Below are positions 19,701 to 43,837 of a DNA stretch of 64,000 bases, piece by piece (positions within the stretch are counted from its first letter, which is position 1; each line of letters opens with the position of its first letter). The position numbers and the translations under genes were made by a program. The stretch spans positions 1,426,001-1,490,000 of the forward strand of contig CATNEN010000007.1 of NCBI GenBank assembly GCA_950097015.1, read 5' to 3'. The DNA is from Macrostomum hystrix. Its lineage: Eukaryota; Animalia; Platyhelminthes. The notes beneath the pieces are model-generated. The model made no database searches, had not been told where the DNA came from, and saw only the letters and a list, made by a program, of their open reading frames with translations.

Positions 19701-20036
19701 TGAGAAACTGCTGTCCCTAGAGAATCGACCCTGAGAAAATGGTGTCTCTAGAGAATCGACCCTGAGAAACTGCTGTCTCTAGAGAATCGACCCTGAGAAA
19801 CTGCTGTCCCTAGAGAATCGACCATGAGAAACTGCTGTCCCTAGAGAATCGACCATGAGAAACTGCTGTCTCTAGAGAATCGACCCTGAGAAACTGCTGT
19901 CCCTAGAGAATCGAACCTGAGAAACTGCTGTCCCTAGAGAATCGACCCTGAGAAACTGGTGTCTCTAGAGAAGCGCCCCTGAGAAATTGGTGTCCCTAGA
20001 GAATCGCCAGTGAGAAACTGGTGTCCTTAGAGAATC
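16790..20036. repeat. 31-bp minisatellite CTAGAGAATCGCCAGTGAGAAACTGGTGTCC, ~105 variant copies
   Basis: AGAATCGAC at 16861 and 16892. Confidence 0.97.
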
Positions 20037-20068
20037 GCGATTGCCGTCAAATTCACAGGGTGGCTGCC

Positions 20069-20546
20069 ATGGCTGCGCCCTACAAGCTTGTGAACCTGAC
20101 CCTGGAGCTGGCCCGCAATCTCAGGCCAGGTGACATCATCGAGAACTCCTATTACATGTTCTGGCACCCGTACATTGTGGAGAGCTGCGTCGCCGTCGTG
20201 GACCCAGACGGGCCTGATCAAGGGACACCAGAAGTGACTGTGCGAGTCATTCACTACGGACGAAGAGACCTGCTTGAAGGCATCTCGGTGCTGCAGGAGA
20301 ACATCATCCTGGACGCTGACAACACAGCCAACGGTCGCTTCCGACTGTACGAGTTTCAACAGGGCGGACTGCAGGCCAGACGAGGAGACCATCGAGCTGG
20401 CTCGGGGTCGCCTCGGCGAGGCGCAGCACCGCATGCTCTCAAACAATGCCACATACTTCGCCCTGTCCTGCCGTCTCACCGAGGAGGCCTTCGAGAGATG
20501 CAAGGCGAGCATCGGTCGGTTTCGAGTTGTCAATCCGTTTGGATGA
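20069..20546 (+). CDS. LRAT/PLAAT (permuted NlpC/P60) family protein, ~158 aa, catalytic Cys replaced, +1 frameshift at ~20354
   Basis: MAAPYK..LRPGDIIE..YMFWHPY..VIHYG in one frame, then ETIELARGRLGEAQHRMLSNNATYFALSCR in the next; removing one T from GAGTTTCAAC joins them. NATYF replaces NCEHF. Confidence 0.75.
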
Positions 20547-20579
20547 GCTTCGGTCATGACTTGTGCGAGTTCTTTGTAA

Positions 20580-21580
20580 AAATTCCCAGATTCCTAATTC
20601 CCAGATTCCCAATTCCCAGATTCCCAATTCCCAGATTCCCAATTCCCAGATTCCTAATTCCCAGATTCCCAGTTCCCAGATTCCCAATTCCCAGATTCCC
20701 AATTCCCAGATTCCCAATTCCCAGATTCCCAATTCCCAGATTCCCAATTCCCAGATTTCCAATTCCCAGATTCCCAATTCCCAGATTCCCAATTCCCAGA
20801 TTCCCAATTCCCAGATTCCCAGTTCCCAGATTCCCAATTCCCAGATTCCCAATTCCCAGATTCCCAATTCCCAGATTCCCAATTCCCAGATTCCCAATTC
20901 CCAGATTCCCAATTCCCAGATTCCCAATTCCCAGATTCCCAATTCCCAGATTCCCAGTTCCCAGATTCCCAATTCCCAGATTCCCAATTCCCAGATTCCC
21001 AATTCCCAGATTCCCAATTCCCAGATTCCCAATTCCCAGATTCCCAGATTCCCAATTCCCAGATTCCCAATTCCCAGATTCCCAATTCCCAGATTCCTAA
21101 TTCCCAGATTCCCAGTTCCCAGATTCCCAGATTCCCAATTCCCAGATTCCCAATTCCCAATTCCCAGATTCCCAATTCCCAGATTCCCAATTCCCAGATT
21201 CCCAATTCCCAGATTCCCAATTCCCAGATTCCCAATTCCCAGATTCCCAATTCCCAGATTCCCAATTCCCAGATTCCCAATTCCCAGATTCCCAATTCCC
21301 AGATTCCCAGATTCCCAATTCCCAGATTCCCAATTCCCAGATTCCCAATTCCCAGATTCCTAATTCCCAGATTCCCAGTTCCCAGATTCCCAGATTCCCA
21401 ATTCCCAGATTCCCAATTCCCAATTCCCAGATTCCCAATTCCCAGATTCCCAATTCCCAGATTCCCAATACCCAGATTCCCAATTCCCAGATTCCCAATT
21501 CCCAGATTCCCAATTCCCCGATTCCCAATTCCCAGATTCCCAATTCCCAGATTCCCAATTCCCAGATTCCCAATTCCTAG
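20580..21580. repeat. 15-bp minisatellite AATTCCCAGATTCCC, ~67 copies
   Basis: Direct periodicity; source of the spurious IPRFP/GIWEL ORFs. Confidence 0.97.
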
Positions 21581-22457
21581 ATCGCTATATAACGATAAAA
21601 AATTCAACGTGCTCTTCAGACAAGACGTCATTTCTTAAAAATACCGACATGCTTTACTATGAGTACTATTCTATGATTCATCATCTTCGTATTGAGTGAC
21701 TTGCTTAACTAATCAGTTTAAACATGCTCATGCAAAATGACTTAAAAATTATCAAAATATTCAATCTGCTGATTGTACATTCTTGCAAAAATCTTGCACA
21801 TCTTTTTAATCATCTAAAATCTATTTGCACCAACAATATGAGCTAATCATATAGACAGAATCGCCCTGCACTAATTTTAGTCAATGAAAGCAAATTTTAT
21901 GCAAAATTTATTTCTGAATAGTCTTGTAGTCTGGCTTGTTGGTGCGCGTGCACTTAGATGTGCACGCGCGGCTTGTTTGGGGTGGGGGGTTTAGCGCTGC
22001 AGCGTGCGTTCGCTTAGGGTGGTTGCACCCACCCCAACTTTGCCGTTAAATATATTGGCGTGAGCCAGTGAGGGCTCCTGACGTGTTTTGTTATGTTCTA
22101 CAACCTAAACCACGGTCGTACAGTCTATTGTAGTCTAATAAACCTCAGAGAGGAATTCGAAGCCCAATGGACTGGGGAGAAGAATGTGTAGCCTCATGGA
22201 CTGGGGAGAAGGGTGTTTAGCCCAATGGACTGGGTAGAAGGGTGTGTAGCCTCATGGACTGGGGAGAAGGGTGTGTCGCCTAATGGACTGGGGAGAAGGG
22301 TGTGTAGCCCAATGGACTGGGGAGAAGGGTGTGTAGTCTCATGGACTGAGGAGAAGGGTGTGTAGCCGAATGGACTGGGGAGAAGGGTGTGTAGCCTCAT
22401 GGACTGGGGAGAAGGGTGTGTAGCCTCATGGACTGGGGAGAAGGGTGTGTAGCCTCA

Positions 22458-25900: not shown

Positions 25901-27887
25901 TTCTTTTCTACTTGTGAGAATGAAAGGAAGGAAATTAAAGCCGAAATGAATGCAAAAAAGAGGCGAATTTCAGATGTTAAATATAATATTTTTCCGATTT
26001 TCTGTTACCGCGGAACAAACAAAGCGAGAGCGATAGATACCGAGTGGACTCAAGAATGGAAAGTGGAATAAGCCATTCGATGCTGACAGGAAATTGCGAC
26101 TTTGCAAGTTGCCTGGTGTTGGGGAAAATGACCCAAAGGCACACTTAAAATTTCTAACAACTTTGCAAAGATGACTGGAAATTGAATTTTTCTAACGTCT
26201 GGAAAAACTGTTAGCGTGTATTTTGCTAAGGTGATCACTTGGAAACTGAGTGGGACAATACAAATTTTAGAGTAGTTTGAAATAAGATCTTTCAATTTTC
26301 TTTGCTCCTTGCAGGGGGCTAGAATTTGCTAGTCTACTACACTAAAACCGATTCTATTTTATTAACTTGAAGTTCGCATCTGTTGAAGGGATTCGAACTG
26401 CACTATATTCGGCACAGTTGCAGCTCGCTTTACCGAGGCACGCAAGAAAGCTCTAAGGGGAGAAAAAGATTAATTATTAGCTGCCGAGTGACCTGGCTGC
26501 AGAGGCGGCATGCAGCTTCCTGCTACTAATTAGGCTCTGGCAACTGCGAGCTGAGCCCGGAGTGCCGAATTTGATTGGACCATTGTGTTGCTGTGGCCTT
26601 CCAAACTCTGAGAACACAATCTGTATTCGTGATACAAATGCACGAAACATTGCCTACGTATCGCACTGGGAAAGGCTCAAAAGAGACGCAACTCGAAAGG
26701 CTGACTTGAAAGCTAGCTTATAGTCAATAAGTAGTTACTTTAATTCCGGTAGAAATGAAAGACGTGTGGCCGCTAATCTGTTAAAATTTATATTCGCTAA
26801 TTTTTCTTGTTTGCAATGGTAAATAAATATTTTTTTGTTTTCATTCTTTAATTTTATTCGGTAAAAATTTCACTTCCTAACAATCTAATATCCCTAACAA
26901 TATTTAGTTGTCAACGATCATTCCATTATAGCTTGTATGTGTTACTTCCATTTCCCACTATAATAAGACGAAATTAAACTTCTTAAAGTTGCACTTCAGA
27001 GCACCTGATAGATTGCTTGCTTCACGTTTACAATTCGAAATCGTAACTAGTTCTTTGTTTAAAACCGTTAATTTCTATCTTCATAGAGAATCGTTACTTT
27101 TTTAAAGTTGTCCTTTGCATCCGCTACTATCAATAATCATAATTTGTTTTGTGTGACAATTTTTCTACTTTCTAACGCGTCTGAAGACCTTCCGCTACTA
27201 TTTTAAATCGTTACTTTTCGCTTTGACCTCAATAAAAGTTAGACAGAAATAAATATTGAAAGACAAACTATAGATGAAAAGAAAAGCAAAGAAAGCCGCT
27301 TGTCTTGAGTACCCTGCCCTCGTCTTGGAAACTGGATGAAACAGATGAAGAGCAAGAGGACAATGAAGACCTGAGCGCAGACTCCAGATGACAAAGAGAC
27401 ATTCTTCAATGAAATCTAGACTTTCTAGGTGGTGGATTGCTTAAAATGAACACTCAGCATTTTACTTTGGCTTTAGAATTGACAAACCGAATCTTAGCGA
27501 CTTCTGTGCGTGCTGCATCATGTTTGAGATCTAGAGAAAGGGAGAGAGAGGGAGCCGTACATGTTTCTGACCTCCCAAACAGTCAAACTCTGGCGCGATT
27601 CGCTGCCTCTGACGGCCAACCAATGGCAGAGGTGCTCACACGCACACACGCACACACACACACAAACCCCGCGTTCCATATGTGAATTGGAAAGAGTTAA
27701 ATTTGCTTAGAGTCTAAGAATTCTCCGGCATTTATTTATCATCTCATTGTCGTGAGTGTCTTCAAATTCTCAGTCAATTGAAACTTCCTTCAGCTGGAAG
27801 TTTACCTATTCACCTGCTCTGCAGTGTGGTGCTGACAGGCTGTGCGTGATTATAGAGGTATGTTATCTAGATAGATTAGATAAGTTA

Positions 27888-28881
27888 AATCATTCTAGAT
27901 GGGGGTCATGGAGAACTCAAAATGGGATATAAATCATTCTAGATGGGGTCATGGAGAACTCAAAATGGGATACAAATCATCCTAGATGGGGTCATGGAGA
28001 ACTCAAAATGGGATATAAATCATTCTAGATGGGATCATGGATAACTCAAAATGGGATATAAATCATTCTAGATGGGGTCATGGAGAACTCAAAATGGGAT
28101 ACAAATCATCCTAGATGGGGTCATGGAGAACTCAAAATGGGATATAAATCATTCTAGATGGGATCATGGATAACTCAAAATGGGATATAAATCATTCTAG
28201 ATGGGGTCATGGATAACTCAAAATGGGATATAAATCATTCTAGATGGGGTCATGGATAACTCAAAATGGGATATAAATCATTCTAGATGGGGTCATGGAT
28301 AACTCAAAATGGGATATAAATCATTCTAGATGGGATCATGGATAACTCAAAATTGGATACAAATCATTCTAGATGGGATCATGGATAACTCAAAATGGGA
28401 TACAAATCATTCTAGATGGGGTCATGGATAACTCAAAATGGGATATAAATCATTCTAGATGGGGTCATGGATAACTCAAAATGGGATATAAATCATTCTA
28501 GATGGGATCATGGATAACACAAAATTGGGTACAAATCATTCTAGATGGGATCATGGATAACTCAAAATGGGATATAAATCATCCTAGATGGGATCATGGA
28601 TAACTCAAAATTGGATACAAATCATTCTAGATGGGGTCATGGAGAACTCAAAATGGAATACAAATCATTCTAGATGGGGTCATGGATAACTCAAAATGGG
28701 ATATAAATCATTCTAGATGGGGTCATGGATAACTCAAAATGGGATATAAATCATTCTAGATGGGATCATGGATAACACAAAATTGGGTACAAATCATTCT
28801 AGATGGGATCATGGATAACTCAAAATGGGATATAAATCATTCTAGATGGGATCATGGATAACTCAAAATGGGATATAAATC
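27888..28881. repeat. 43-bp minisatellite, ~23 copies
   Basis: GATATAAATC at 28141 and 28184. Confidence 0.97.
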
Positions 28882-28997
28882 CTTCTATGAAGTAGATAGA
28901 ATTATGAATTATATTATTAGAATTATACTTAACCCTGAATTGTTTTTAAATTTCGTTAGATACACAATTCTGAGTGAAAAAAAATATTTTCAGAACA

Positions 28998-31900
28998 ATG
29001 TCCAGCGATCAGCCCAGCCTCACCATCGGCTACTTCAGTCATCCGCCATTCTCCGACTTTGTCCACAATCACGTCGAGGGCGTCTTCTGGGATTTGGTCA
29101 AGGTCGCCCTGAACGGCTGTCTGTACGATTCGTCTACGGGCCCGCCGAGGCCTCGTTTTCAGCGCTATGAAAACGAGGACAGCCTACTGAGATACGGATT
29201 ATCCAGCTGCAACCTCAGCTTCCCCATCACTGGGACCCCGCTGTACAACCGACTGGACACAGATGCCTCCTTCATCCCCATAATCAGTTCCCCAGGTGAG
29301 AGACTGAATGATCCCCATAATCAGTTCCCCAGGTTAGAGACTGAATGATCCCCATAATCAGTTCTCCAGGTGAGAGACTGAATGATCCCCATAATCAGTT
29401 CTCCAGGTGAGAGACTGAATGATCCCCATAATCAGTTCTCCAGGTGAGAGACTGAATGATCCCCATAATCAGTTCTCCAGGTGAGAGACTGAATGATCCC
29501 CATAATCAGTTCTCCAGGTGAGAGACTGAATGATCCCCATAATCAGTTCTCCAGGTGAGAGACTGAATGATCCCCATAATCAGTTCTCCAGGTGAGAGAC
29601 TGAATGATCCCCATAATCAGTTCTCCAGGTGAGAGACTGAATGATCCCCATAATCAGTTCACCAGGTTGATCCCCATAATCAGTTCTCCAGGTGAGACTG
29701 AATGATCCACATAATCAGTTCCCCAGGTGAGAGACTGAATGATCCCCATAATCAGTTCTCCAGGTGAGAGACTGAATGATCCCCATAATCAGTTCACCAG
29801 GTTGATCCCCATAATCAGTTCTCCAGGTGAGACTGAATGATCCACATAATCAGTTCCCCAGGTGAGAGACTGAATGATCCCCATAATCAGTTCTCCAGGT
29901 GAGAGACTGAATGATCCCCATAATCAGTTCCCCAGGTTAGAGACTGAATGATCCCCATAATCAGTTCTCCAGGTGAGAGACTGAATGATCCCCATAATCA
30001 GTTCTCCAGGTGAGAGACTGAATGATCCCCATAATCAGTTCCCCAGGTTAGAGACTGAATGATCCCATAATCAGTTCCCCAGGTGAGAGACTGAATGATC
30101 CCCATAATCAGTTCCCCAGGTTAGAGACTGAATGATCCCCATAATCAGTTCTCCAGGTGAGAGACTGAATGATCCCCATAATCAGTTCTCCAGGTGAGAG
30201 ACTGAATGATCCCCATAATCAGTTCCCCAGGTTAGAGACTGAATGATCCCATAATCAGTTCTCCAGGTGAGAGACTGAATGATCCCCATAATCAGTTCTC
30301 CAGGTGAGAGACTGAATGATCCCCATAATCAGTTCACCAGGTTGATCCCCATAATCAGTTCTCCAGGTGAGACTGAATGATCCACATAATCAGTTCCCCA
30401 GGTGAGAGACTGAATGATCCCCATAATGAGTTCTCCAGGTGAGAGACTGAATGATCCCCATAATCAGTTCCCCAGGTTGATCCCCATAATCAGTTCTCCA
30501 GGTGAGACTGAATGATCCACATAATCAGTTCCCCAGGTTGATCCCCATAATCAGTTCTCCAGGTGAGACTGAATGATCCACATAATCAGTTCCCCAGGTT
30601 GATCCCCATAATCAGTTCTCCAGGTGAGACTGAATGATCCACATAATCAGTTCCCCAGGTGAGAGACTGAATGATCCCCATAATCAGCTTCCACAGGTGA
30701 GCCTGTGTGATCCCCATAATCAGTTCCCCAGGTGAGAGACTGATTGATCCCCATAGTCAGTTTCCCAAGGTGAGTGTCTAAATGATCCCCATAATCCCCA
30801 GTAATGTAGCGCGAAATGATTAGCCCTTTCCATTTAGACACGTAGTTCAATTTTGTTAGATTTTTTCTCGTTCCCTTGTTTTTTAGCAGCCAAGATTTGT
30901 TATCCTATCTTACAGTCAGGTCTCTTATCTCACTCTGGGGTTCTTAAATCTCTCGCTTTCATTTAAACATTATTTCACACTTTTTTCTGTCGCCCTAGAC
31001 TCCCTCACTTCTAATCAATCAATCACCTATTTATTTCTCCTATCTTCTCCTCTCCGCTCCTCATATTCCCTCACCCTCTCCCATTCTCCCCTCACCCTCT
31101 CTATTCTCCCTCACCAACTCCGATCTCCCCTCACCCTCTCCCATTCTCATCTCACCCTCTCCCATTCTCCCCTCACCCTCTCTATTCTCCCTCACCAACT
31201 CCGATCTCCCCTCACCCTCTCCCATTCTCCCCTCACCCTCTCCCATTCTCCCTTCACCCTCTCCCATCTCCCCTCACCCTCTCCCATTCTCCCCTCACCC
31301 ACTCCCATTCTCATCTCACCCTCTCCCATCTCCCCTCACCCACTCCCATTCTCCCCTCACCCACTCCCATCTCCCCTCATCCACTCTCATGTCCCTGAAC
31401 CTCTCCTTTTTCTTTGTACCTTTTTGTTCTTAGCGTTCCTAGAAACAATTCCTACGCTTTTCTCATCTGCGCGATGCGATCCATTTTTCAGACGTCACCG
31501 AATCCGGCAATTTTCCTAGAAACCGCGCACGAATTCCGGGAAACCCCGCGCCCGTGCCGCACAGAAATTAGTTAAAGCTACCAGAGCCTGCTTATTCACT
31601 TGCTCTCTCTGGGGTTGTGCTGCGGTGAGGAAAGTGCAACAGCCCCGAGGGACGCTTGACAATGACCAGTGCTGGCAGCACTGGCTATACAAAGTGGGCT
31701 GCCCTGGCCGAATATCATATTTTTGTTCGGCCGAAGCTTAAGTTCGAATCCGGAACCTTTTTTTCTCTTTCCGCCGCCCGCCTCCCCCCCCCCCCGCAGT
31801 GACAGAAAAATATCAGATACCCGCCCCCTGACTGGTCCATTCCAGATGTTTATCGACTCCCGAAGCAGCCTGCCTCCAATGTCCGGTCGACCTAACCCTC

Positions 31901-34900
31901 TCCATAGAGTTTTTTTCCCTCTCAATGGTCTGGCTAAATCCCACAGTTTCAAATGACCGCTGAAAGCTGTAGGTCCCATGGATTTTAACTGACGAATAAC
32001 ATATTTTATTATACAAGCGGATCAGTGCTGTGACCTCGCTGACCTCATGGCCGCTTCTGCTATTACAGTTATCTAACTCTTTTATTTCTTAAATGGATTT
32101 TGTTCGACGCTTGGTGAATAGGCTTAGGCCATAGACTAAAGCAAACTGTCGAGAGGCTAATAGACACGGGCTTGCAGCCTGCCAGTACTTTAAAGCTATA
32201 GTTTCTCGTCTATTTTAAAGTGGCTCTGTTTTGTACTTTTACTTTAGCGAAAGCAAACAAGCAAAATAATCGAATCAATATTTTGGTATCTTGTTTGTCT
32301 AGAGTGGAGAGACTGCAAGTTGTCTAACAGGTTTGCTTGACCATCGTTTCTTTAGCAATCCTAATTAGATTGTCTATATAGGTTTCTCTCTTAAAACTAA
32401 TTACAGTGATCGCCTCATGAATTAAAGAAAACAATTTACTTCTCTGTCACAATGAATTTGACGTCAGTTCAAATCATTCGAAATTATGCACTGATTTTAT
32501 CCACTTTGTTAAATAGACCAAGTGTTTCAGCATTCGGCATTCCGAATCGATTTGAAATGTGGTCTCTTATTCGAGTTTTTTCGAAAAACAATATGAAAAA
32601 ACTGTGAAGTTATTTTAAATATCCACCCCACACCTTTCTCTCATCTGCAATTTTATGTCGACCTAACATGCCCACATCACACCGCCTCACTTTGATTGGG
32701 TGTCAGTTCAAGGTCATGCTAATTTTAAATTCGCTTCGCTTTTACATTTTATCACGACGAACCCACCCCAAACCCTTGCTTCCCTCATTACTGTATATAG
32801 TCGATCATATTTCCACCTCACGCCATCTCGCTCTCATTGGCTCTTAGTTCAAGGTCGATGCTATTTTTAGACTCAACCCACCCCAACCCCCTCCGTCATC
32901 CAAGGCGCCGTGTGGCTGGACCCCACAGCGGGCCCGCACCAGACTAGCATGGCCCAACTGAGAGTGATCGGTCAGGCTTGGCCGCTACTGCTCATCATCA
33001 TTGTCTCCTGTTCATTTGCCGCGGTGCTTGTTTGGTTCATGGTGAGGATTTCCGTAGATTTCTTTGGCTTGCTTTTTGAGGCTTGTGACCAACGGACAAC
33101 CCGCATTCGATCTTCAGATCTTTTTTGTGCCGCGTTTAAGATCAAAGAATCTGAAAGAGGATTTCCTGATCAATGGATAGGATTATAAAGTCACTCAGTT
33201 GTACGAGTAAATCCCGTTTGAAAAAACTCAAACAAAATATCAACAGAGCGTAAAAACTCTGAAATTTAATCTCTGAGGGCCTCTTTGGTTTCTACAATGT
33301 GCTGAAGAGGACAAGATTTTTGTTGAATGTGGCCTTTGCTTCTGTCTGACTTCATGTTTTCCTAGATTTCTTTTCACAATTCAACAAATGTGGATATTAG
33401 AAGCACGGGGATCAGACATTGGGGATGTGAGACATTGGGGATGTGAGACATTGGGGATGTAAGACATTGGGGATGTGAGACACTGGGGATGTGAGACATT
33501 GGGGATGTGAGACATTGGGGATGTGAGACATTGGGGATGTGAGACACTGGGGATGTGAGACATTGGGGATGTGAGACACTGGGGATGTGAGACATTGGGG
33601 ATGTGAGACATTGGGGATGTGAGACACTGGGGATGTGAGACATTGGGGATGTGAGACATTGGGGATGTGAGACACTGGGGATGTGAGACACTGGGGATGT
33701 GAGACACTGGGGATGTGAGACATTGGGGATGTGAGACACTGGGGATGTAAGACACTGGGGATGTGAGACACTGGGGATGTGAGACATTGGGGATGTAAGA
33801 CACTGGGGATGTGAGACACTGGGGATGTGAGACACTGGGGATGTGAGACATTGGGGATGTGAGACATTGGGGATGTGAGACACTGGGGATGTGAGACATT
33901 GGGGATGTGAGACATTGGGGATGTGAGACACTGGGGATGTGAGACACTGGGGATGTGAGACACTGGGGATGTGAGACATTGGGGATGTAAGACACTGGGG
34001 ATGTGAGACACTGGGGATGTGAGACATTGGGGATGTGGAAGATTGGGGATGAGACATTGGGGATGTGAATATTGATGTTATGGGACTTTCTTAGCAGCTT
34101 TGGGGCATTTTTAAATGAATCTAGATAGAAAACGGACTGAATGCTTTTAACTTAAAAAATTTTTTTGTCACTTTCAGTTGTCGCAGAAACCTACCCATCC
34201 CTGATTGTCATTTCCCCAACAGGAGCGGCTGAGAAATCCCCAGGAATTTCCCAGACCGTTCGTGCGCGGCTTCTGGGAGGGCTGGTGGTGGGCCTTCATC
34301 ACCATGACAACCGTCGGGTAAGCGGTCCATTGTCTTCAATTCTCCAAAGTCGCTCTACCCGCTGATCCTCAGCCTCAACGTGAATATTCCCTTGGGGGGG
34401 GGCAAGGCCCGCCTCTCTGAAGCTGCAGAGCCCTGCCGGTGTGAGACGAAGAAGAGGTGAAAATCATTGAGAGCCAGCGAGAGGATGCAGAACAGTTTTT
34501 TTTCTTTCACGCGGTCGATGCTGCCTGGCGTCCCCAACGCGAGTTTTAGTTATCCCAAATTCTCGCTGCTCGCATAATGAATTCGATCGATTTCAAGCAA
34601 CCAGTGGTTGAGGCTGTTCTCACATTGCAATGAATTATTGATGCCTCCGAGTGCTTTGAGAGTTCTTCAGTTTGGCTCGCCCTTGTGGCGGTGGGGGTCG
34701 ATGCAAATTCACTTCTGAACTACTTTTTATTGTCGCTCGCAGAAAATAGATTTAGAAGCTGAATTGAACGGAAATCTGAATTCATTTAGTCTATTGCTTC
34801 CTTTTGTAGTTTGCCGACAAAGAACTCGCCATCGAAATGCTATTATATTCTGCATTGCAGCTACGGCGATCGGTCGCCGAAGACCATCTGCGGCCGTCTA

Positions 34901-37900
34901 TTCGCCATGGCCTGGATCAGTTTCGGCCTGATTCTGATCTCCATGTTCACAGCTGGGGTCACCACCGCACTGAGCCAGGGAGCTCAGGATGAAGAGGACA
35001 GCCGATTCTTCCAGACTAATGTGAGCTGAGATTCAGGTGTGATGTAGGTGAGATTCAGGAGTGATGTAGGTGAGATTCAGGAGTGATGTAGGTGAGATTC
35101 AGGAGTGATGTAGGTGAGATTCAGGAGTGATGTAGGTGAGATTCAGGAGTGATGTAGGTGAGATTCAGGAGTGATGTAGGTGAGATTCAGGAGTGATGTA
35201 GGTGAGATTCAGGAGTGATGTAGGTGAGATTCGAATGGGATTTAGGTGAGATTCAAATGGGATTTAGGTGAGATTCGAATGGGATTTAGGTGAGATTCAA
35301 ATGGGATTTAGGTGAGATTCGAATGGGATTTAGGTGAGATTCGAGTAGGATTTAGCTGAGATTCAAATGGGATTTAGGTGAGATTCGAGTAGGATTTAGC
35401 TGAGATTCAAATGGGATTTAGGTGAAATTCAAATGGGATTTAGGTGAGATTCGAATGGGATTTAGGTGAGATTCAAATGGGATTTAGGTGAGATTCGAGT
35501 AGGATTTAGCTGAGATTCAAATGGGATTTAGGTGAGATTCGAATGGGATTTAGGTGAGATTCGAATGGGATTTAGGTGAGATTCGAATGGGATTTAGGTG
35601 AGATTCAAATGGGATTTAGGTGAGATTCGAGTAGGATTTAGCTGAGATTCAAATGGGATTTAGGTGAGATTCGAGTAGGATTTAGCTGAGATTCAAATGG
35701 GATTTAGGTGAGATTCGAATGGGATTTAGGTGAGATTCAAATGGGATTTAGGTGAGATTCGAATGGGATTTAGGTGAGATTCGAATGGGATTTAGGTGAG
35801 ATTCGATTAGGTGTGGCTCGTAAAATCTGTTTTAAAACAGTAAAAAATGTTGCTTTGAACCCATAAAATCCGTTTGCGTAAATTAGAAATTTTCGAACCT
35901 TTTTTGAAACGGTCGACAATAAAAGCTGCAGTGAGTGGCAAATAGTCACTGTGAATAGAGGCTGCAACTACTGTACCAACCGAATCTGGATGGCAACACA
36001 ACAAACTGTTAAAATGCTTTGAGGGACAGCCTTAGCCTGCATTTTTGGGATTATGTTTATACTTTCCCCTCTTTCCCCGTCTTCCACCCTCTCCGTCTTT
36101 TCAACCTCGGTTTCGCTCACAAATTCACTGCAGCACACGGAAGTTTTTGATCGACAACAGAAGAAAGAAAAAACTTTTTTTTCAGTATTTTCCTTGCCGT
36201 CTCTCTCACGTTTATCTCTCTTACCTTTTCACCGACCGCCAGATGACGATGGTGACGCTGTCCCTCCATTTGTCGGCGGGCATTAATGTGCCAATTCCAT
36301 CAGTGTCTGGTCTCTGTGCGCGCGTCACGCCACCCCTCCTCTTGTCTCTCTCTCTCTATTTAAGAGTGGCGTTATATTTTCTAGCTTCCAGTTTCGTCAG
36401 ACCATGCAGCTGTTGCATTTAGGTTTTCCATTTCTTTTTCTTTTTTTTTCTCTCAAAGAAACCCATAAAAAAGTTGACTTTGCTTTTCTGTTTGGCCACT
36501 CGCAGTAAATGTGCTACCATGCGAAAGTAACGTGCACTTCTCCTTCTTTAACGTCTATACAAAGAACTCTATACAATAGCCGATATTCACTAACTGCATC
36601 AATCAATCGGTATCTATGCGGCTTCCGCACTTCATTTTTCAGATTTTTGCGTCTGGGTCGAAAATATAAAGCCAGATTTGTCTTCAGATAAAATTTCTTT
36701 GGATTAGCTTAGCCATGGACTTCTATAGCTAGCACCTAGAATATGCTAGCTATAGTAGTACATGGCTTAGGTCTTTCACTTTTATTGTTCAAGCAAAATC
36801 ACTTGGGCATCCTTAAGAAATGCCCCTCGCATTTTTTCGTTTTGCGTCCTTCGTGTTTTAATCTAGGGACAGGGTTCAGTAGTTTACTTAAAATGGTTCG
36901 CCTGATGCCAAAGCAGATACGGGCCAAGAAATAACTGGAGACACTTCAGGACAAGAAGAACTCACAGAAAGGCTAGGACACTGAAGCCACTTGACAATGG
37001 ATGTCAAGCTAAGGTTTACAGGAAGGACGTTGTAGACAATGGCTGGCTGTAGAAATTGTCAGTAACTCATGCCACGGAGGACAGACTCCGCGCTACCTTA
37101 AGATCAAACTCTGTGAAGACTGCCTCTAGAACTTTCCAGAAAATACCTTTGTCAACGAGAGAAGATATTGCAAATGGACCATTTCAAACCCACGTAGCAA
37201 ATATGTCTATGGTACAAACAGATTTACTTAACATCGCTTCCTAGGGGTTGTAGCCTAGTGGTTGTGGGGTGCGTAGGACTTACGTCTTAAAGGTCAGGGT
37301 TCGATTCCCCCCGACCTAGCCCTCCCTAGGGGAGGGAGGCTACTAGGGGAGGGAGGGCTACTAGGGGAGGGAGGGCTACTAGGGGAGGGAGGGCTACTCG
37401 GGGAGGGAGGGCTACTAGGGGAGGGAGGGCTACTCGGGGAGGGAGGGCTACTCGGGGAGGGAGGGCTACTAGGGGAGGGAGGGCTACTAGGGGAGGGAGG
37501 GCTACTAGGGGAGGGAGGGCTACTAGGGGAGGGAGGGCTACTAGGGGAGGGAGGGCTACTCGGGGAGGGAGGGCTACTAGGGGAGGGAGGGCTACTAGGG
37601 GAGGGAGGGCTACTAGGGGAGGGAGGGCTACTAGGGGAGGGAGGGCTACTCGGGGAGGGAGGGCTACTAGGGGAGGGAGGGCTACTCGGGGAGGGAGGGC
37701 TACTAGGGGAGGGAGGGCTACTAGGGGAGGGAGGGCTACCAGGGGAGGGAGGGAGAGTGAGGAAGCATGTTGCCCAGTGGTTTGAGGTCAGAGAATCAAC
37801 TGTCAGCCCTAAGAAGGCAATTAGTATATTTGAATGCATAATTTTTTTTCTGATTGGCTATTATTTTCAGATCACGGTGATTAACGGATCGTTTGAACAA

Positions 37901-39875
37901 ATATTCGTTTACGAACTGGGCTCGACACCGATTCGTAAGGGAAATTGTTTTCTTCGATAGTACTTAGCTCGTGTTTGACATTGCTCTATAGAATTTCTCC
38001 CCCATTAGTGATAAACGATTGGCAGAGCCTTCTGCAGTCTAATGTCACTGACAACGAGGAGTCAGAGGCCAGGCACCACGGTGCACTCATCGAGCACTAC
38101 ATGTACCTGCACCTGCGCCAGGAGCATCAAGGCCGAATGAGCCGCATCAAGCCTCAGTACGTGCTCAAACGGCCGTCACTGCGGGGCGTGTACTCTAACC
38201 TGGGCGGCACGATTAACCGCTGCCTGGCTGGCGCAATGCTCAGTAAACAAATCAGCATTTACGGGAGCATTGTCGGACACAAGCACGTTGGAGAACAGGT
38301 GAAGCTGGGGCGCCGACTGAAGTAAATGGCTGTATGCGTGGGGCTGGATTCGACAAGGAGTGAGGTGGGTTTATAAAGTGAGGCCGAATTGGGGCAGGGA
38401 GTGAGGTGGGCGGATGACTAGGGGCTGATTGCGGCAGTGAGGTAGGTGAATAACCAGGCGTTGATTGGGGCAGGGAGTGAGGTGGGCGGATGACTAGGGG
38501 CTGATTGCGGCAGTGAGGTAGGTGAATAACCAGGCGTTGATTGGGGCAGGGAGTGAGGTGGGCGGATGACTAGACGCTGATTGGGGCAAGGAGTGAGGTG
38601 GGCGGATGACTAGGGGCTGATTGCGGCAGGCAGTGAGGTAGGTGAATAACCAGGCGTTGATTGGGGCAGGGAGTGAGGTGGGCGGATGACTAGACGCTGA
38701 TTGGGGCAAGGAGTGAGGTGGGCGGATGACTAGGGGCTGATTGCGGCAGGCAGTGAGGTAGGTGAATAACCAGGCGTTGATTGGGGCAGGGAGTGAGGTG
38801 GGCGGATGACTAGACGCTGATTGGGGCAAGGAGTGAGGTGGGCGGATGACTAGGGGCTGATTGCGGCAGGGAGTGAGGTAGGTGAATAACTAGGCGCAGA
38901 TTGTGGCAGGGAATGAGGAGGGCGGAACGGCGAATGACATTTGTGACGCTCGCTGGCATCATTGCAGGCAGCGCAGAGCCCGGAGGTGGCGGAGGAGGTG
39001 GCGCAGAGCCTGTTTTCAACAAGCAACGCCGCACTCGGAGTCGTGGCCGGAGTGTTTGTGGCTATCTTTATTAGCCTGGTGATCTGGGAGAAGCTCTACT
39101 GGAAGCCTAGAAATCCCAACTATAAATGTGAGTAATAATTGCTAGCATTTCCTTGAATTTATTGAATTCGAACTTTTCTTTGGAAAAAACCGAAAAAGGA
39201 AAAGAATTAGATAAAGATAATTCCGGGTGTCTGGTCTGTGGGGTGTCTGGTCTGTGGGGTGTCTGGTCTGTGGGGTGTCTGGTCTGTGGGGTGTCTGGTC
39301 TGTGGGGTGTCTGGCTGTGGGGTGTCTAGTCTGTGGGGTGTCTGGTCTGTGGGGTGTCTAGTCTGTGGGGTGTCTGGTCTGTGGGGTGTCTAGTCTGTGG
39401 GGTGTCTGGTCTGTGGGGTGTCTGGTCTGTGGGGTGTCTAGTCTGTGGGGTGTCTGGTCTGTGGGGTGTCTAGTCTGTGGGGTGTCTGGTCTGAGGTCAT
39501 CTCAGGTGCAAGCCGGCCCAAATCCCCTCCTTAGTTGTCGAGCACAACTGGAAATACGACCGGCAGAAGAAGGAGGCGGAGCTGGGCCGTCAGCTGGACC
39601 TGAAGTCCTACCATAGACAGCTAAGCTCCAGGCGCAGCGCCTGCAGCGCGGCCACCACGCCAACCGCCGGACCGTCGGGCATCTCGCGGCCTGTCACGAT
39701 CGAGTCGCTGCACGGGGTCACGCTGGAAGGCGACTCGGCCGCCTCGGAGAACAATGGCTCGGCTGGCGTCGACAACCGTCGGCTCTGGTGCCAGCAGCCC
39801 GCGGAGCGGCTGAACGAGGAGGACGCCGCCGAAGATGCAGCCGCCGAGGCGGCCACGCCAATGTCCAGCGTTTAA
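28998..39875 (+). CDS. Ligand-gated channel of iGluR topology with K+ selectivity filter (GluR0/AvGluR1-like), 8 coding exons, ~514 aa
   Basis: Exons 28998-29295, 32905-33041, 34223-34317, 34861-35020, 37871-37934, 38009-38298, 38968-39127, 39535-39875; all GT-AG and phase-compatible, 1545 nt. S1 ending FIPIISSPG, M1 WPLLLIIIV.., pore WWWAFITMTTVGYGD, M3, S2 (VINGS..), M4 ALGVVAGVFVAIFISLVIW. Confidence 0.88.
29273..30795 (+). repeat. 37-bp minisatellite made of the last 22 nt of exon 1 plus its GTGAG donor, ~41 copies
   Basis: Unit ATCCCCATAATCAGTTCTCCAG|GTGAGAGACTGAATG; CTCCAGGTGA at 29401 and 29438. Confidence 0.95.
31050..31390. repeat. 21-bp pyrimidine-rich repeat CTCACCCTCTCCCATTCTCCC, ~16 copies
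   Basis: Direct periodicity. Confidence 0.9.
33412..34070. repeat. 16-bp minisatellite GGGGATGTGAGACA(T/C)T, ~41 copies
   Basis: GGGGATGTGA at 33421 and 33437. Confidence 0.97.
35025..35812. repeat. 22-bp minisatellite with two unit types (GTGAGATTCAGGAGTGATGTAG, then GTGAGATTCGAATGGGATTTAG), ~36 copies
   Basis: Begins at the exon 4 donor; unit type switches near 35230. Confidence 0.95.
37244..37315 (+). mobile_element. SINE family 1, tRNA-like head only
   Basis: GGGGTTGTAGCCTAGTGG A box and GGTTCGATTCC B box (37298-37308). Confidence 0.75.
37320..37755. repeat. 18-bp G-rich minisatellite CTACTAGGGGAGGGAGGG, ~24 copies
   Basis: Direct periodicity. Confidence 0.97.
38380..38925. repeat. 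Composite G-rich minisatellite with GAGTGAGGTGGG core and higher-order duplication
   Basis: Alternating subunits; a ~120-bp block recurs (38580-38820). Confidence 0.9.
39225..39492. repeat. 16-bp minisatellite GTCTGGTCTGTGGGGT, ~17 copies
   Basis: Direct periodicity. Confidence 0.95.
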
Positions 39876-40528
39876 ACAAAATTGACCAATCTAGCTAGAC
39901 TATTTCTAAAAAATCCTTGAAACCAAATCAATTAATTTGTTACCTGATTCCGCACTTTCACTGTTGTATGTAGCAGTTTCATATCATCTTGTGAATTGGT
40001 TCGTGCTCACCAAGAAATAAAAGTACATTTTCACGCTCCGACTTCAACTGAAACTAGCTTTGAACTTCGACTGACTGACTGATTTATAGTCTGTAGCTCG
40101 TACATAGCTCGTTTGAGATACAGGTGTATTAACTATATATGTATGTATATTTGATATGAAAAAAAATTTCTCTGGAAATCAGAGCAGAAAATGTACCTAA
40201 TCCTAATTTGGAAGATTTTTAGCGTTAGGGAAGCATTTGCATCTATCGAAAGAAATGAAAAAGAAACCTTTGTATTATTGCAATCATAAGTAGAAAATTA
40301 TACAACATATCACTACACAAAGAGCTAGTCTTTACAAGTTTATAAAGAAACGAAGTTAGCATATTCAGATAGCTTTTCTTTGAACCATTTTTGCAGTATT
40401 TTCAATATAGTTTAATAAATTAAATCGCAAATGTCTGCATGCCTACTGTTAGCTAGCGAGTTAGTAGTGTGATTCGTGTGCTAAATTGTTGCTTAATCGA
40501 CTTGACTATGATTTAGCAGGTTTTTTAG

Positions 40529-43837
<3,309 letters not shown>

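What the first reader, a model, noticed from the sequence alone, without database searches (positions are those of the whole stretch)
28998..39875. Animal glutamate-receptor-shaped channel with a perfect potassium filter (TMTTVGYGD)
Seen: S1-M1-pore-M3-S2-M4 order; the filter is split by an intron (GG|C TAC GGC GAT). No amino-terminal domain or signal peptide is present in the modelled ORF, though NLS, NGS and NVT sequons suggest extracellular lobes. Known: vertebrate-type iGluRs lack TVGYG, whereas cyanobacterial GluR0 and rotifer AvGluR1 have it, and GluR0 lacks M4. Inference: an intron-rich, hence long-resident, member of a poorly characterised ligand-gated K+ channel class that could be an inhibitory amino-acid receptor. 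Candidate ligand residues (YNR in S1, NGS and ALIE in S2) are divergent, so the ligand may not be glutamate.
Basis: partly seen in the sequence, partly recalled or inferred. Interest (0 to 1): 0.78.

Follow-up and report, generated by a model that had tools for sequence, protein, structure and literature searches.

The report
Flatworm receptor-shaped potassium channel gene
This is a real, expressed eight-exon flatworm gene for a channel built like a glutamate receptor but carrying a complete potassium-channel filter. It belongs to an old, apparently unstudied animal family that may be potassium channels opened directly by an outside chemical.

Summary
Window 28998-39875 (+) carries an intact eight-exon gene of about 514 codons, in the order S1-M1-pore-M3-S2-M4-tail. 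The TMTTVG|YGD filter is split by a GT..AG intron (34318-34860), which spliced contigs of two public runs cross exactly.

The genome, a Macrostomum flatworm, has three paralogues (dN/dS 0.17-0.31). The gene belongs to a large animal family: 519 representatives, found in corals, sea anemones, jellyfish, acorn worms, a brachiopod, annelids and flatworms. All named members are "uncharacterised". Its (V/I)(S/T)MTTVGYGD filter is nearly invariant, and the filter-splitting intron is shared with Nematostella and hemichordates.

Profile comparison links S1, pore and S2 to bacterial GluR0-type channels (E 2e-42). A model of the closest full-length relative gives a binding-protein clamshell (Z 17.9) on an AMPA-receptor-like LBD-TMD chain. 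There is no amino-terminal domain. In Macrostomum there is also no signal peptide in the first coding exon.

The most likely function is a tetrameric, ligand-gated, K+-selective (inhibitory) channel with an unknown ligand. The canonical S1 arginine is not conserved. Function is untested.

The scan had already reported two other such genes elsewhere in this genome, probably two of these paralogues. I found no paper on the family.

The parts
28998..29295 (+). Coding exon 1. Start codon, then immediately the first beta-strand of lobe S1. Two conserved Cys, the CNLS sequon, the FPITGTPLYNR segment. No signal peptide.
   Evidence: Open frame, with a TGA 9 codons upstream. Donor CAG|GTGAGA, whose exon end appears as a loose end in the run X4 contig. 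Conserved in 3 paralogues at 36-56% identity, each with a Met 5-12 codons before the first strand.
29274..30796 (+). 37-bp minisatellite, about 43 copies. It starts inside the end of exon 1 and repeats the exon end plus donor: 30 exact copies of CAGGTGAGA. These are decoy donors in intron 1.
   Evidence: Tandem Repeats Finder; count of donor copies.
32905..33041 (+). Coding exon 2: end of S1 and transmembrane helix M1 (AWPLLLIIIVSCSFAAVLVWFM).
   Evidence: Phase fits exon 1 (G|GC) and exon 3. Its last 30 bases are the loose end joined to 34222/3 in contigs of X2, X3 and X5. 46-84% identity to paralogues.
34223..34317 (+). Coding exon 3: cytoplasmic M1-P loop (ERLRNPQEFPRPF), pore helix (EGWWWAF) and the first half of the filter, TMTTVG (ends with GG of the Gly codon).
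   Evidence: Contig pieces 34222-34316 and the joint to 34860/1 in X3 and X5. 89-94% identity to paralogues. Weak Pfam Ion_trans_2 hit, below cut-off. Same exon and phase in Nematostella, Glandiceps and Saccoglossus.
34318..34860 (+). Intron 3 (543 bases, GT..AG, phase 2), which splits the selectivity filter TVG|YGD.
   Evidence: Joint "skips 543, GT..AG" in spliced contigs of two runs. Same position and phase in a cnidarian and in hemichordates.
34861..35020 (+). Coding exon 4: YGD of the filter, gate helix M3 (SMFTAGVTTAL, related to the iGluR SYTANLAAF motif) and the start of S2.
   Evidence: Pfam Ion_trans_2 31.4 bits (cut-off 22.5) and Lig_chan 21.5 bits. Best solved-structure match is GluN1 M3. 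Contig pieces 34860-35020, with a loose end that is the start of exon 5.
37871..37934 (+). Coding exon 5 (S2a): strand plus the NGS loop (ITVINGSFEQ...). This is the counterpart of the GS/GST ligand loop of GluR0 and binding proteins.
   Evidence: Its first 30 bases are joined to 35020 in contigs of X3, X4 and X5. The NGS is conserved in all four paralogues. A 21-codon exon is conserved in Nematostella and Saccoglossus. Alignment to the GluR0 LBD.
38009..38298 (+). Coding exon 6 (S2b): the rest of lobe 2 and the return to lobe 1. It includes GALIEH, whose acidic residue sits at the position of the alpha-amino-binding D/E.
   Evidence: The acceptor ccccattag|TG is the only one that keeps frame with exon 5, and it is colinear with the unspliced C11 paralogue. 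39-60% identity to paralogues. The S2 profile hits the Nostoc GluR0 LBD at E 7e-8.
38968..39127 (+). Coding exon 7: end of S2, transmembrane helix M4 (ALGVVAGVFVAIFISLVIW) and the basic stretch KLYWKPRNPNYK.
   Evidence: Open frame and canonical sites. The donor T|GTGAG is conserved in all four paralogues. 40-68% identity to paralogues. The M4 helix is modelled at pLDDT 85-95 in the relative and overlays the AMPA-receptor M4.
39535..39875 (+). Coding exon 8: conserved cytoplasmic helix (F)VEHNWKYDRQKKEAEL, a low-complexity tail and the stop codon TAA.
   Evidence: The acceptor cccctccttag|TT gives Phe, as in the M. lignano protein (...YQ F IEHNWKY) and in paralogues C11 and C39. tblastn of P0001 starts at 39534. 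Long helix in the model.

Best explanation
The locus encodes one subunit (about 514 residues) of a tetrameric channel with glutamate-receptor topology. A two-lobed binding-protein clamshell (S1+S2) sits outside the cell. M1, a re-entrant pore loop and M3 form the pore, and a third membrane helix, M4, is followed by a cytoplasmic helical tail. The pore loop is a complete potassium-channel filter: WW pore helix plus TMTTVGYGD. It enters the membrane from the cytoplasmic side, as in bacterial GluR0.

The most likely working is this. A small extracellular ligand closes the clamshell, which pulls on the M3 gate (SMFTAGVTTAL) and opens a K+-selective pore. That drives the cell towards the K+ equilibrium potential, an inhibitory or shunting response.

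Shown here: gene structure, splicing and expression, purifying selection, family membership, antiquity, homology to GluR0-type channels over S1, pore and S2, and the clamshell plus LBD-TMD fold of the nearest full-length relative.

Inferred: tetramer formation, K+ selectivity, ligand gating, extracellular position of the clamshell, and physiological sign. The ligand is unknown. It probably carries an amino group, because the S2 acidic residue and GS loop are kept. It need not be an alpha-amino acid, because the S1 arginine is not conserved.
For: Gene and RNA. There are eight in-frame exons with canonical sites. Spliced contigs join M1->P->M3->S2a, including the filter intron, and a 1688-base contig fits the whole mRNA.

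Selection. dN/dS is 0.17-0.31 against three paralogues, with saturated dS.

Pore. Ion_trans_2 scores above its cut-off on exon 4. The family profile hits K+ channels in the PDB at E 6e-17 to 1e-11, with the WWA..TTVGYGD block aligned. The filter is nearly invariant across about 140 representatives. Two relatives that carry the K+ signature are reported as K+-selective: GluR0, and AvGluR1 for K+ over Na+ (PMC12332018; PMC12226733).

Receptor shape. hhalign of the family against bacterial GluR0-type channels gives probability 100%, E 2e-42, over 291 columns from the first S1 strand to the end of S2. The S2 profile hits the Nostoc GluR0 LBD (7e-8), GlnPQ, HisJ, LAO-binding protein and Synechocystis GluR0. 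The AlphaFold model of M. lignano P0001:83-670 has pLDDT 85-96 in the lobes and membrane helices. Foldseek's top hits are AMPA-receptor LBD-TMD chains over about 560 columns, but with low TM-scores of 0.23-0.41. VIA-align gives Z 17.9 for glutamine-binding protein (211 of 222 residues) and Z 17.7 for the GluR0 LBD (209 of 212).

Topology. K+R counts are 4 in the M1-P loop and 5 after M4, against 0-1 before M1, after M3 and before M4. Most family members have signal peptides. There is a conserved Cys pair, and a C-N-(L/I/V)-S sequon in S1 in three of the four paralogues and in M. lignano P0001.
Against: No function has been measured for any family member. The window's own spliced protein was not folded or searched as one piece, under the operators' rule, so fold evidence comes from a relative that is 38-91% identical exon by exon.

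The lobes hit no Pfam family, and the S1 profile has no significant solved relative by sequence. The canonical ligand-binding arginine is absent from two of the three paralogues here and from M. lignano P0001, and is not conserved in the family, so the clamshell might not bind a small ligand at all.

The four Macrostomum genes lack a signal peptide in the first coding exon. This leaves open how the roughly 145 N-terminal residues would cross the membrane. Also, 89-98 transcript bases 5' of the ATG remain unplaced.
Confidence: 0.6

Rival explanations
1. Same protein, but not a ligand-gated K+-selective channel. Either the filter, in this inverted iGluR setting, gives a weakly selective cation channel. 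Or the clamshell has lost small-ligand binding and the protein is a constitutive or otherwise regulated K+ leak channel, or a silent subunit that needs paralogues to work.
For: The S1 arginine is not conserved, and cleft residues vary widely across the family (mean column identity 13%). The lobes are below Pfam detection. Four paralogues in one genome would allow heteromers.
Against: The clamshell is under purifying selection and folds with high confidence. The S2 GS loop and the acidic residue are kept in all paralogues. The full WW...TTVGYGD set is nearly invariant. Both studied relatives with this signature prefer K+.
Confidence: 0.22
2. Inverted topology. Because the Macrostomum proteins start directly with S1 and have no signal peptide, the clamshell stays in the cytoplasm. 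The pore loop then enters from outside, as in ordinary K+ channels, and the channel senses an intracellular metabolite.
For: All four paralogues and two M. lignano models begin with a Met 5-12 residues before the first S1 strand. An in-frame stop lies upstream in the window. In Nematostella and Saccoglossus the signal peptide lies in the same exon as S1, so it has been lost from that exon here. The only signal-peptide-like upstream candidate (21884-21981) overlaps the end of a repeated element.
Against: The positive-inside count favours the iGluR topology. Most family members have signal peptides yet the same loops. The conserved Cys pair and the S1 sequon conserved in most paralogues suit an extracellular domain. 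The 89-98 unplaced 5' transcript bases could still hold a leader exon.
Confidence: 0.08
3. A decaying or non-functional duplicate that is transcribed but makes no working protein.
For: One contig (run X4) joins exon 1 directly to exon 4, skipping M1 and the pore exon and breaking the frame. Intron 1 opens with 30 decoy copies of the donor. One M. lignano relative (P0009) looks degenerate, with GYGG and scrambled stretches.
Against: There is no stop or frameshift in 1545 coding bases. All splice sites are canonical. dN/dS is 0.17 against the closest paralogue. In-frame spliced contigs occur in two or three runs.
Confidence: 0.04

Closest known systems
GluR0 (Synechocystis Slr1257) and other bacterial GluR0-type channels (SBP_bac_3 + Lig_chan + Ion_trans_2)
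   Same: S1-M1-P-M3-S2 order and no amino-terminal domain. TTVGYGD filter with a WW pore helix. The membrane core is alike in consensus (WLLER..N..F...WWA.VTMTTVGYGDK.P....GR...W...GI..IS.FTA.IT.AL). Profile-profile E is 2e-42 over S1, pore and S2. LBD fold match is Z 17.7. GluR0 is glutamate-gated and K+-selective (PMC12332018).
   Different: The animal family adds M4 and a cytoplasmic helical tail, is intron-rich, and forms its own clade (100* against bacteria). Its lobes no longer reach the Pfam SBP_bac_3 or Lig_chan-Glu_bd thresholds. The S1 arginine is not conserved.
AvGluR1 of the rotifer Adineta vaga
   Same: An animal iGluR-superfamily subunit with the TXVGYG K+ signature and an M4. 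It is reported to prefer K+ over Na+ and to resemble bacterial iGluRs (PMC12332018; PMC12226733).
   Different: AvGluR1 has the full eukaryotic architecture, including the amino-terminal domain. This gene and its family have none. Longer members carry CUB+Ig or fn3 domains instead. The S2 profile does not reach the AvGluR1 LBD among solved structures at E<=1, although it does reach bacterial GluR0 LBDs.
Animal iGluRs (AMPA/kainate/delta/phi, NMDA, epsilon, lambda)
   Same: Same LBD-TMD chain fold, including M4. AMPA-receptor chains are the top Foldseek matches, though with low TM-scores. M3 resembles GluN1 M3 and the SYTANLAAF region. There is a partial Lig_chan match.
   Different: A K+ filter stands in place of the Q/R/N-site pore loop. 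There is no amino-terminal domain. Lig_chan scores are only about 20-45 bits and cover M1-M3 only. Published iGluR surveys that select by iGluR profiles at strict cut-offs would mostly miss the family (methods of PMC12226733).
Canonical two-TM and six-TM K+ channels (KcsA, LmK/Lmo2059, KvAP, Kv1.2)
   Same: Pore helix, filter and inner helix align at E 6e-17 to 1e-11. Ion_trans_2 scores above its cut-off.
   Different: The pore module is embedded in a receptor clamshell and is probably inverted in the membrane. There is an extra M4, and no voltage sensor or RCK domain.

Membership tests
Animal GluR0-like K+-filter channel family (uncharacterised; e.g. Nematostella A7RIP6/A7S300, Saccoglossus XP_006819198, Lingula XP_013384319, M. 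lignano A0A1I8J4Y3) | (V/I)(S/T)MTTVGYGD filter preceded by EGFWWAF-type pore helix and EFPRPF loop | tested here: met
   The window reads ...NPQEFPRPFVRGFWEGWWWAFITMTTVG|YGD. Family motif counts are and the consensus.
Animal GluR0-like K+-filter channel family | Phase-2 intron inside the Gly codon of TVG|YG and a 32-codon pore exon | tested here: met
   Same position and phase in the window (RNA-confirmed) and in Nematostella and Glandiceps. In Saccoglossus the same exon boundaries are seen by tblastn.
Animal GluR0-like K+-filter channel family | S1 and S2 lobes forming a clamshell, M4, and a C-terminal helix, with no amino-terminal domain | tested here: met
   All exons are colinear with P0001 and the paralogues. 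The model of P0001:83-670 and its structure matches are. Tested on the relative, not on the window's joined protein.
Animal GluR0-like K+-filter channel family | N-terminal signal peptide (present in most members) | tested here: not met
   The first coding exon starts at the first S1 strand, with an in-frame stop upstream. The 5' leader of 89-98 bases is unresolved. This is a Macrostomum-clade peculiarity and does not exclude membership.
Prokaryotic GluR0 | K+ filter plus SBP_bac_3-type S1/S2 around a two-TM pore | tested here: met
   hhalign E 2e-42. S2 profile against the GluR0 LBDs 2pyy and 1iit.
Prokaryotic GluR0 | Only M1-P-M2, with no third membrane helix after S2 | tested here: not met
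   The M4 exon at 38968-39127 is conserved in all paralogues and family members.
Prokaryotic GluR0 | Canonical amino-acid contacts: S1 Thr/Arg, S2 GS(T) loop, S2 Asp/Glu | tested here: inconclusive
   The S2 NGS and the acidic residue (GALIEH) align with the GluR0 positions. The S1 arginine is displaced in the window (YNR), absent in paralogues C11 and C39 and in P0001, and not conserved in the family.
Eukaryotic iGluRs including AvGluR1 | Amino-terminal (ANF_receptor-type) domain before S1 | tested here: not met
   S1 starts at the initiator Met. No ANF_receptor hit in the 18 family proteins scanned.
Eukaryotic iGluRs including AvGluR1 | Pfam Lig_chan over M1-M4 and Lig_chan-Glu_bd / SBP_bac_3 over the lobes at gathering score | tested here: not met
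   Exon 4 scores 21.5 bits against a cut-off of 30.8. Relatives score 29-45 bits, over M1-M3 in eight of the nine scanned. No lobe hits.
Eukaryotic iGluRs including AvGluR1 | LBD-TMD chain fold with M4 packed as in AMPA receptors | tested here: met
   Foldseek top 50 are AMPA-receptor LBD-TMD chains, E about 1e-7, over about 560 columns, with TM-scores of only 0.23-0.41. VIA Z is 15-16, with ranges reaching M4. Tested on the relative P0001.
K+ channels (Pfam Ion_trans_2) | Pore helix-TVGYGD-inner helix module at gathering score | tested here: met
   Exon 4 alone scores 31.4 bits against a cut-off of 22.5. Relatives score 48-60 bits.
K+ channels (Pfam Ion_trans_2) | K+ over Na+ selectivity | not testable with these tools
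   Needs electrophysiology.

The most novel reading that the evidence does not exclude
Animals from cnidarians to bilaterians keep a whole, unstudied class of ionotropic receptors that hyperpolarise cells directly through a ligand-gated K+ pore. These would be GluR0 descendants that gained M4 but never lost the K+ filter. Their binding pockets are diversified, so their ligands are largely not glutamate. The Macrostomum branch has four genes and has even dropped the signal peptide from the S1 exon. If true, fast K+-based chemical inhibition or chemosensation would exist beside Cl- channels, and there would be a living intermediate between K+ channels and glutamate receptors.
Probability: 0.5. 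Interest if true: 0.85.

Novelty: new variant of a known kind. Interest (0 to 1): 0.7.

Why it matters
Textbook accounts derive glutamate receptors from a K+ channel pore fused to a bacterial binding protein. The only cited intermediates are cyanobacterial GluR0 and one rotifer receptor, AvGluR1.

This gene shows that a GluR0-like subunit with M4 and a perfect K+ filter is widespread and old in animals. Its intron positions are shared between cnidarians and bilaterians. Yet it has escaped iGluR surveys, because its lobes fall below the family profiles.

It gives a directly testable candidate for a ligand-gated, K+-selective (inhibitory) receptor in a genetically tractable flatworm. It also gives natural material for studying how an inverted K+ filter is gated by a clamshell, and possibly compact ligand-gated K+ silencing tools.

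Tried and rejected
1. Word search with the S1 exon alone found nothing. Its length window excludes full-length kin, so the blank means nothing.

2. Pfam on every lobe exon of the window and the paralogues gave no family, even at E<=1. The S1 and S2b exons alone had no solved relative, and neither did the S1 family profile.

3. I looked for an upstream signal-peptide exon that would fit the acceptor at 28993. The only attractive candidate (21884-21981, MQNLFLNSLVVWLVGARA...) overlaps the end of a repeated element with at least 40 genomic copies, so I rejected it.

4. My first models for the 3' exons were replaced. These were an S2b start at 38038, and an M4 donor at 39131 with acceptors at 39496 or 39506. 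Phase and paralogue or orthologue colinearity gave 38009, 39127 and 39535 instead.

Only 34069-35100 could be laid, so four joints lack direct RNA proof.

6. The M. lignano models P0001 and P0002 are chimeras with an SGF29 Tudor gene and carry likely retained-intron inserts (low pLDDT at 77-145 and 280-340). I used only residues 83-670.

7. Pseudogene reading: rejected.

8. I considered horizontal transfer from bacteria as a recent event. Shared introns and a tree that matches animal relationships argue against it.

9. Seven literature searches found no description of the family. The library holds open-access papers only, so this is not proof of absence.

10. I did not run a tetramer prediction.

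Full report
**What is there.** On the + strand between 28998 and 39875 there are eight open, in-frame exon stretches. All their boundaries are canonical GT..AG sites with matching phases:

- exon 1, 28998-29295: ATG, then lobe S1
- exon 2, 32905-33041: end of S1, then M1
- exon 3, 34223-34317: M1-P loop, pore helix, TMTTVG
- exon 4, 34861-35020: YGD, M3, start of S2
- exon 5, 37871-37934: the NGS loop
- exon 6, 38009-38298: rest of S2
- exon 7, 38968-39127: M4
- exon 8, 39535-39875: helical tail, TAA

Together they make 1545 coding bases, or 514 residues. The introns are full of minisatellites.

These are the filter TMTTVGYGD split as GG|C TAC GGC GAT, the sequons NLS, NGS and NVT, the motifs YNR and ALIE, and the lack of an amino-terminal domain and signal peptide.

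**Is it transcribed and spliced as modelled?** Four small public runs (X2-X5, one study) hold 42-45% of the sampled words of 37860-39880. That is about the exonic share of the stretch.

Laid on 34069-35100, contigs of X3 and X5 skip exactly 34318-34860 (543 bases, GT..AG). This joins TMTTVG to YGD. Their loose ends are the last 30 bases of exon 2 (before 34222/3) and the first 30 bases of exon 5 (after 35020). So four consecutive exons are joined in RNA.

A 1688-base contig of X3 has 534 bases before exon 3 and 899 after exon 4. This fits the whole model plus 98 bases of 5' leader and about 44 bases of 3' UTR.

One X4 contig joins exon 1 directly to exon 4. That is out of frame, and is probably a minor mis-spliced form.

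Four joints therefore rest on sequence logic and on colinearity with relatives.

**Is it under selection, and whose genome is it?** The same genome holds three paralogues, on C11, C39 and C33. All exons are conserved in them, with 35-94% identity per exon.

Summed exon by exon, dN/dS against them is 0.17, 0.21 and 0.31, with dS above 1.4. These are old duplicates under purifying selection.

The closest database proteins are two Macrostomum lignano models, P0001 and P0002. They are colinear with all eight window exons. By identity they are orthologues of the C39 paralogue. The genome is therefore a Macrostomum flatworm other than M. lignano. This is an inference, and it agrees with earlier notes of the scan.

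**The family.** I searched 1.84 billion representatives exhaustively, using the fused M1+pore exon of paralogue C33 as query. This gave 519 proteins at E<=1e-3.

Typical members are 450-600 residues. Most have an N-terminal signal peptide. The filter (V/I)(S/T)MTTVGYGD is almost invariant.

Named members come from these groups:

- Cnidaria: Nematostella (several), Montipora, Stylophora, Actinia, Rhopilema
- Hemichordata: Saccoglossus, Glandiceps, Ptychodera
- Brachiopoda: Lingula
- Annelida: Owenia, Capitella
- Platyhelminthes: Macrostomum

All are labelled uncharacterised, "potassium channel domain-containing", or mislabelled as YugO or Kv2-like. The ESM Atlas gives the same picture.

Pfam sees only Ion_trans_2, Ion_trans and a partial Lig_chan over M1-M3. 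The lobes hit nothing. Some longer members carry CUB+Ig or fn3 domains in front of S1, and none scanned carries an ANF_receptor domain.

**Antiquity.** The intron that splits the filter lies at the same nucleotide and in the same phase, inside the Gly codon of TVG|YG. It bounds a 32-codon pore exon in Nematostella and Glandiceps, and Saccoglossus has the same pore-exon boundaries. The 21-codon S2a exon is found in Nematostella and Saccoglossus, and the 53-codon M3 exon in Saccoglossus.

I built a quick maximum-likelihood tree of 39 proteins, rooted on bacterial GluR0-type channels. The animal family is monophyletic (100*). All labelled bilaterians fall in one starred clade (98*). Within it the flatworm sits with the brachiopod and the annelid, at lower support (84) and on a long branch.

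This pattern fits vertical descent from the cnidarian-bilaterian ancestor. It does not fit a recent transfer.

**What it is related to.** Profile against profile, the family matches bacterial GluR0-type channels (SBP_bac_3 + Lig_chan + Ion_trans_2). The probability is 100% and E is 2e-42 over 291 columns, from the first S1 strand through the pore to the end of S2.

The family's S2 profile alone finds the following in the PDB, but no eukaryotic iGluR LBD at E<=1:

- the Nostoc GluR0 ligand-binding core (E 7e-8)
- GlnPQ, HisJ and LAO-binding protein
- Synechocystis GluR0

The whole profile finds K+ channels (LmK, KvAP, KcsA, Kv1.2, Shaker) at 6e-17 to 1e-11. Exon 4 alone finds GluN1 M3.

**Fold.** I therefore folded the nearest full-length relative, M. 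lignano P0001 residues 83-670, with a 79-sequence family alignment. pLDDT is 85-96 in S1, M1-P-M3, S2 and M4. It is low only in inserts that look like retained introns of that gene model.

Foldseek's best matches are AMPA-receptor LBD-TMD chains over about 560 columns (E about 1e-7, probability 1.00). Their TM-scores are low, at 0.23-0.41.

VIA-align gives:

- Z 17.9 for glutamine-binding protein (211 of 222 residues, rmsd 3.1)
- Z 17.7 for the GluR0 LBD (209 of 212 residues)
- Z 15-17 for plant GLR3.4, GluD1 and GluA chains, with some alignments running into M4

**Ligand site.** In the HMMER alignment to the GluR0 LBD, the family's G.kvGvLnGSee loop matches the GST loop. Its dGiLlD motif matches the DAvvfD motif, which carries the residue that holds the ligand's amino group. 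The window has NGS and GALIEH at these places, and all paralogues keep them.

The S1 segment that carries the carboxylate-binding Arg in GluR0 (T..R.) reads FPITGTPLYNR in the window. There the Arg is two residues out of register. Paralogues C11 and C39 and M. lignano P0001 have no Arg there, and the family has no conserved residue.

So the pocket is diversified. An amine-bearing ligand is plausible, but an alpha-amino acid is not required.

**Topology and the missing signal peptide.** Basic residues cluster in the M1-P loop (4) and after M4 (5). They are rare before M1, after M3 and before M4 (0-1). That is the iGluR/GluR0 topology, with the clamshell outside.

S1 has a conserved Cys pair. 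It also has a C-N-(L/I/V)-S sequon, kept in three of the four paralogues and in M. lignano P0001.

Yet all four Macrostomum paralogues and two M. lignano models start with a Met only 5-12 residues before the first S1 strand. In the window a TGA lies nine codons upstream. In Nematostella and Saccoglossus the signal peptide lies in the same exon as S1, so it has been lost from that exon here.

The transcript has 89-98 bases 5' of the ATG that I could not place. A good acceptor (ttttcag) sits four bases before the ATG.

A scan for a leader exon gave one signal-peptide-like candidate, at 21884-21981, which overlaps the end of a repeated element with at least 40 genomic copies. I rejected it.

Two readings remain. 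Either M1 acts as a reverse signal anchor, or a small leader exon remains unfound. An inverted topology with a cytoplasmic clamshell is possible but disfavoured.

**Mechanism (inference).** By homology with GluR0 and iGluRs, four subunits would form the pore, and ligand-driven closure of the clamshell would open the M3 bundle. With the complete WW...TTVGYGD module the pore should select K+, as reported for GluR0 and AvGluR1 (PMC12332018; PMC12226733). Opening would hold or drive the cell towards E_K. No step of this has been measured for any family member.

**Comparison and novelty.** The protein works like GluR0 and is its homologue, but it is not a GluR0, because it has M4 and a tail. It has the chain fold of animal iGluRs but lacks their amino-terminal domain, their pore type and their Pfam-level lobes.

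It shares the K+ signature and M4 with AvGluR1, which however has the full eukaryotic architecture.

It is a member of an animal family that sits in the databases unnamed. I found no paper on it in seven searches of the held (open-access) library. A 2025 review still lists only GluR0 and AvGluR1 as such intermediates.

The scan itself had already flagged two other such genes on other pieces of this genome, probably two of the three paralogues, with the same reading. This report adds:

- RNA proof of the filter-splitting intron
- its conservation in cnidarians and hemichordates
- the family tree
- the loss of the signal peptide from the S1 exon
- the CUB/Ig- and fn3-bearing relatives

**Left out.** All searches used single exons by reference, or database relatives.

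Noticed in passing
window 29274-30796: Intron 1 opens with a 37-bp minisatellite of about 43 copies. Its first unit is the end of exon 1 plus the splice donor, so 30 exact copies of CAG|GTGAGA follow the real donor, in all three phases. It is unclear how the spliceosome picks the first one.
   Followed up: partly
window 29295 -> 34861 (contig of run X4): One assembled transcript joins exon 1 directly to exon 4. It skips the M1 and pore exons (232 bases) and is out of frame. Probably a minor non-productive isoform or an assembly artefact.
   Followed up: partly
window about 21925-22060 and onward: End of a repeated element with at least 40 near-identical copies in the genome. The copies often come in pairs about 4.7 kb apart, which suggests the terminal repeats of a transposon. 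The region 20000-21650 has long overlapping ORFs on both strands.
   Followed up: partly
window 40761-41069 (- strand): Exon of a CaMKIV-like protein kinase. It matches human CaMK4 (E 8.6e-23) over 79 residues that include the calmodulin-binding region. It is the tail-to-tail neighbour of the channel gene.
   Followed up: partly
proteins P0027, P0055, P0094, P0109, P0127, P0170 (CUB+Ig) and P0079 (fn3), from metagenome/transcriptome assemblies: Longer family members carry a CUB domain plus an Ig domain, or an fn3 domain, in front of S1. These are extracellular modules fused to a K+-filter receptor channel. CUB domains are otherwise known in the Neto auxiliary proteins of kainate receptors.
   Followed up: partly
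M. lignano UniProt A0A1I8J4Y3 / A0A1I8GUP9 (P0001, P0002): These public gene models are chimeras. An SGF29 Tudor domain is fused to the channel, with probable retained-intron inserts. Their name, "SGF29 C-terminal domain-containing protein", hides the channel.
   Followed up: yes
paralogue loci G000:C33:4353802-4354107 and G000:C11:5506275-5506766: Lineage-specific intron loss. In C33 the M1 and pore exons are fused. In C11 the two S2 exons are fused. The S1|M1 intron of Macrostomum is absent from Nematostella, Saccoglossus and Glandiceps.
   Followed up: partly
window 27886-28887, 31068-31406, 33414-34068, 35027-35806, 37326-37753, 38388-38926, 39225-39493: A long minisatellite lies just upstream of the gene and in six of its seven introns (periods 16-43 bp, 14-41 copies). 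That is an unusually high density for one gene.
   Followed up: no
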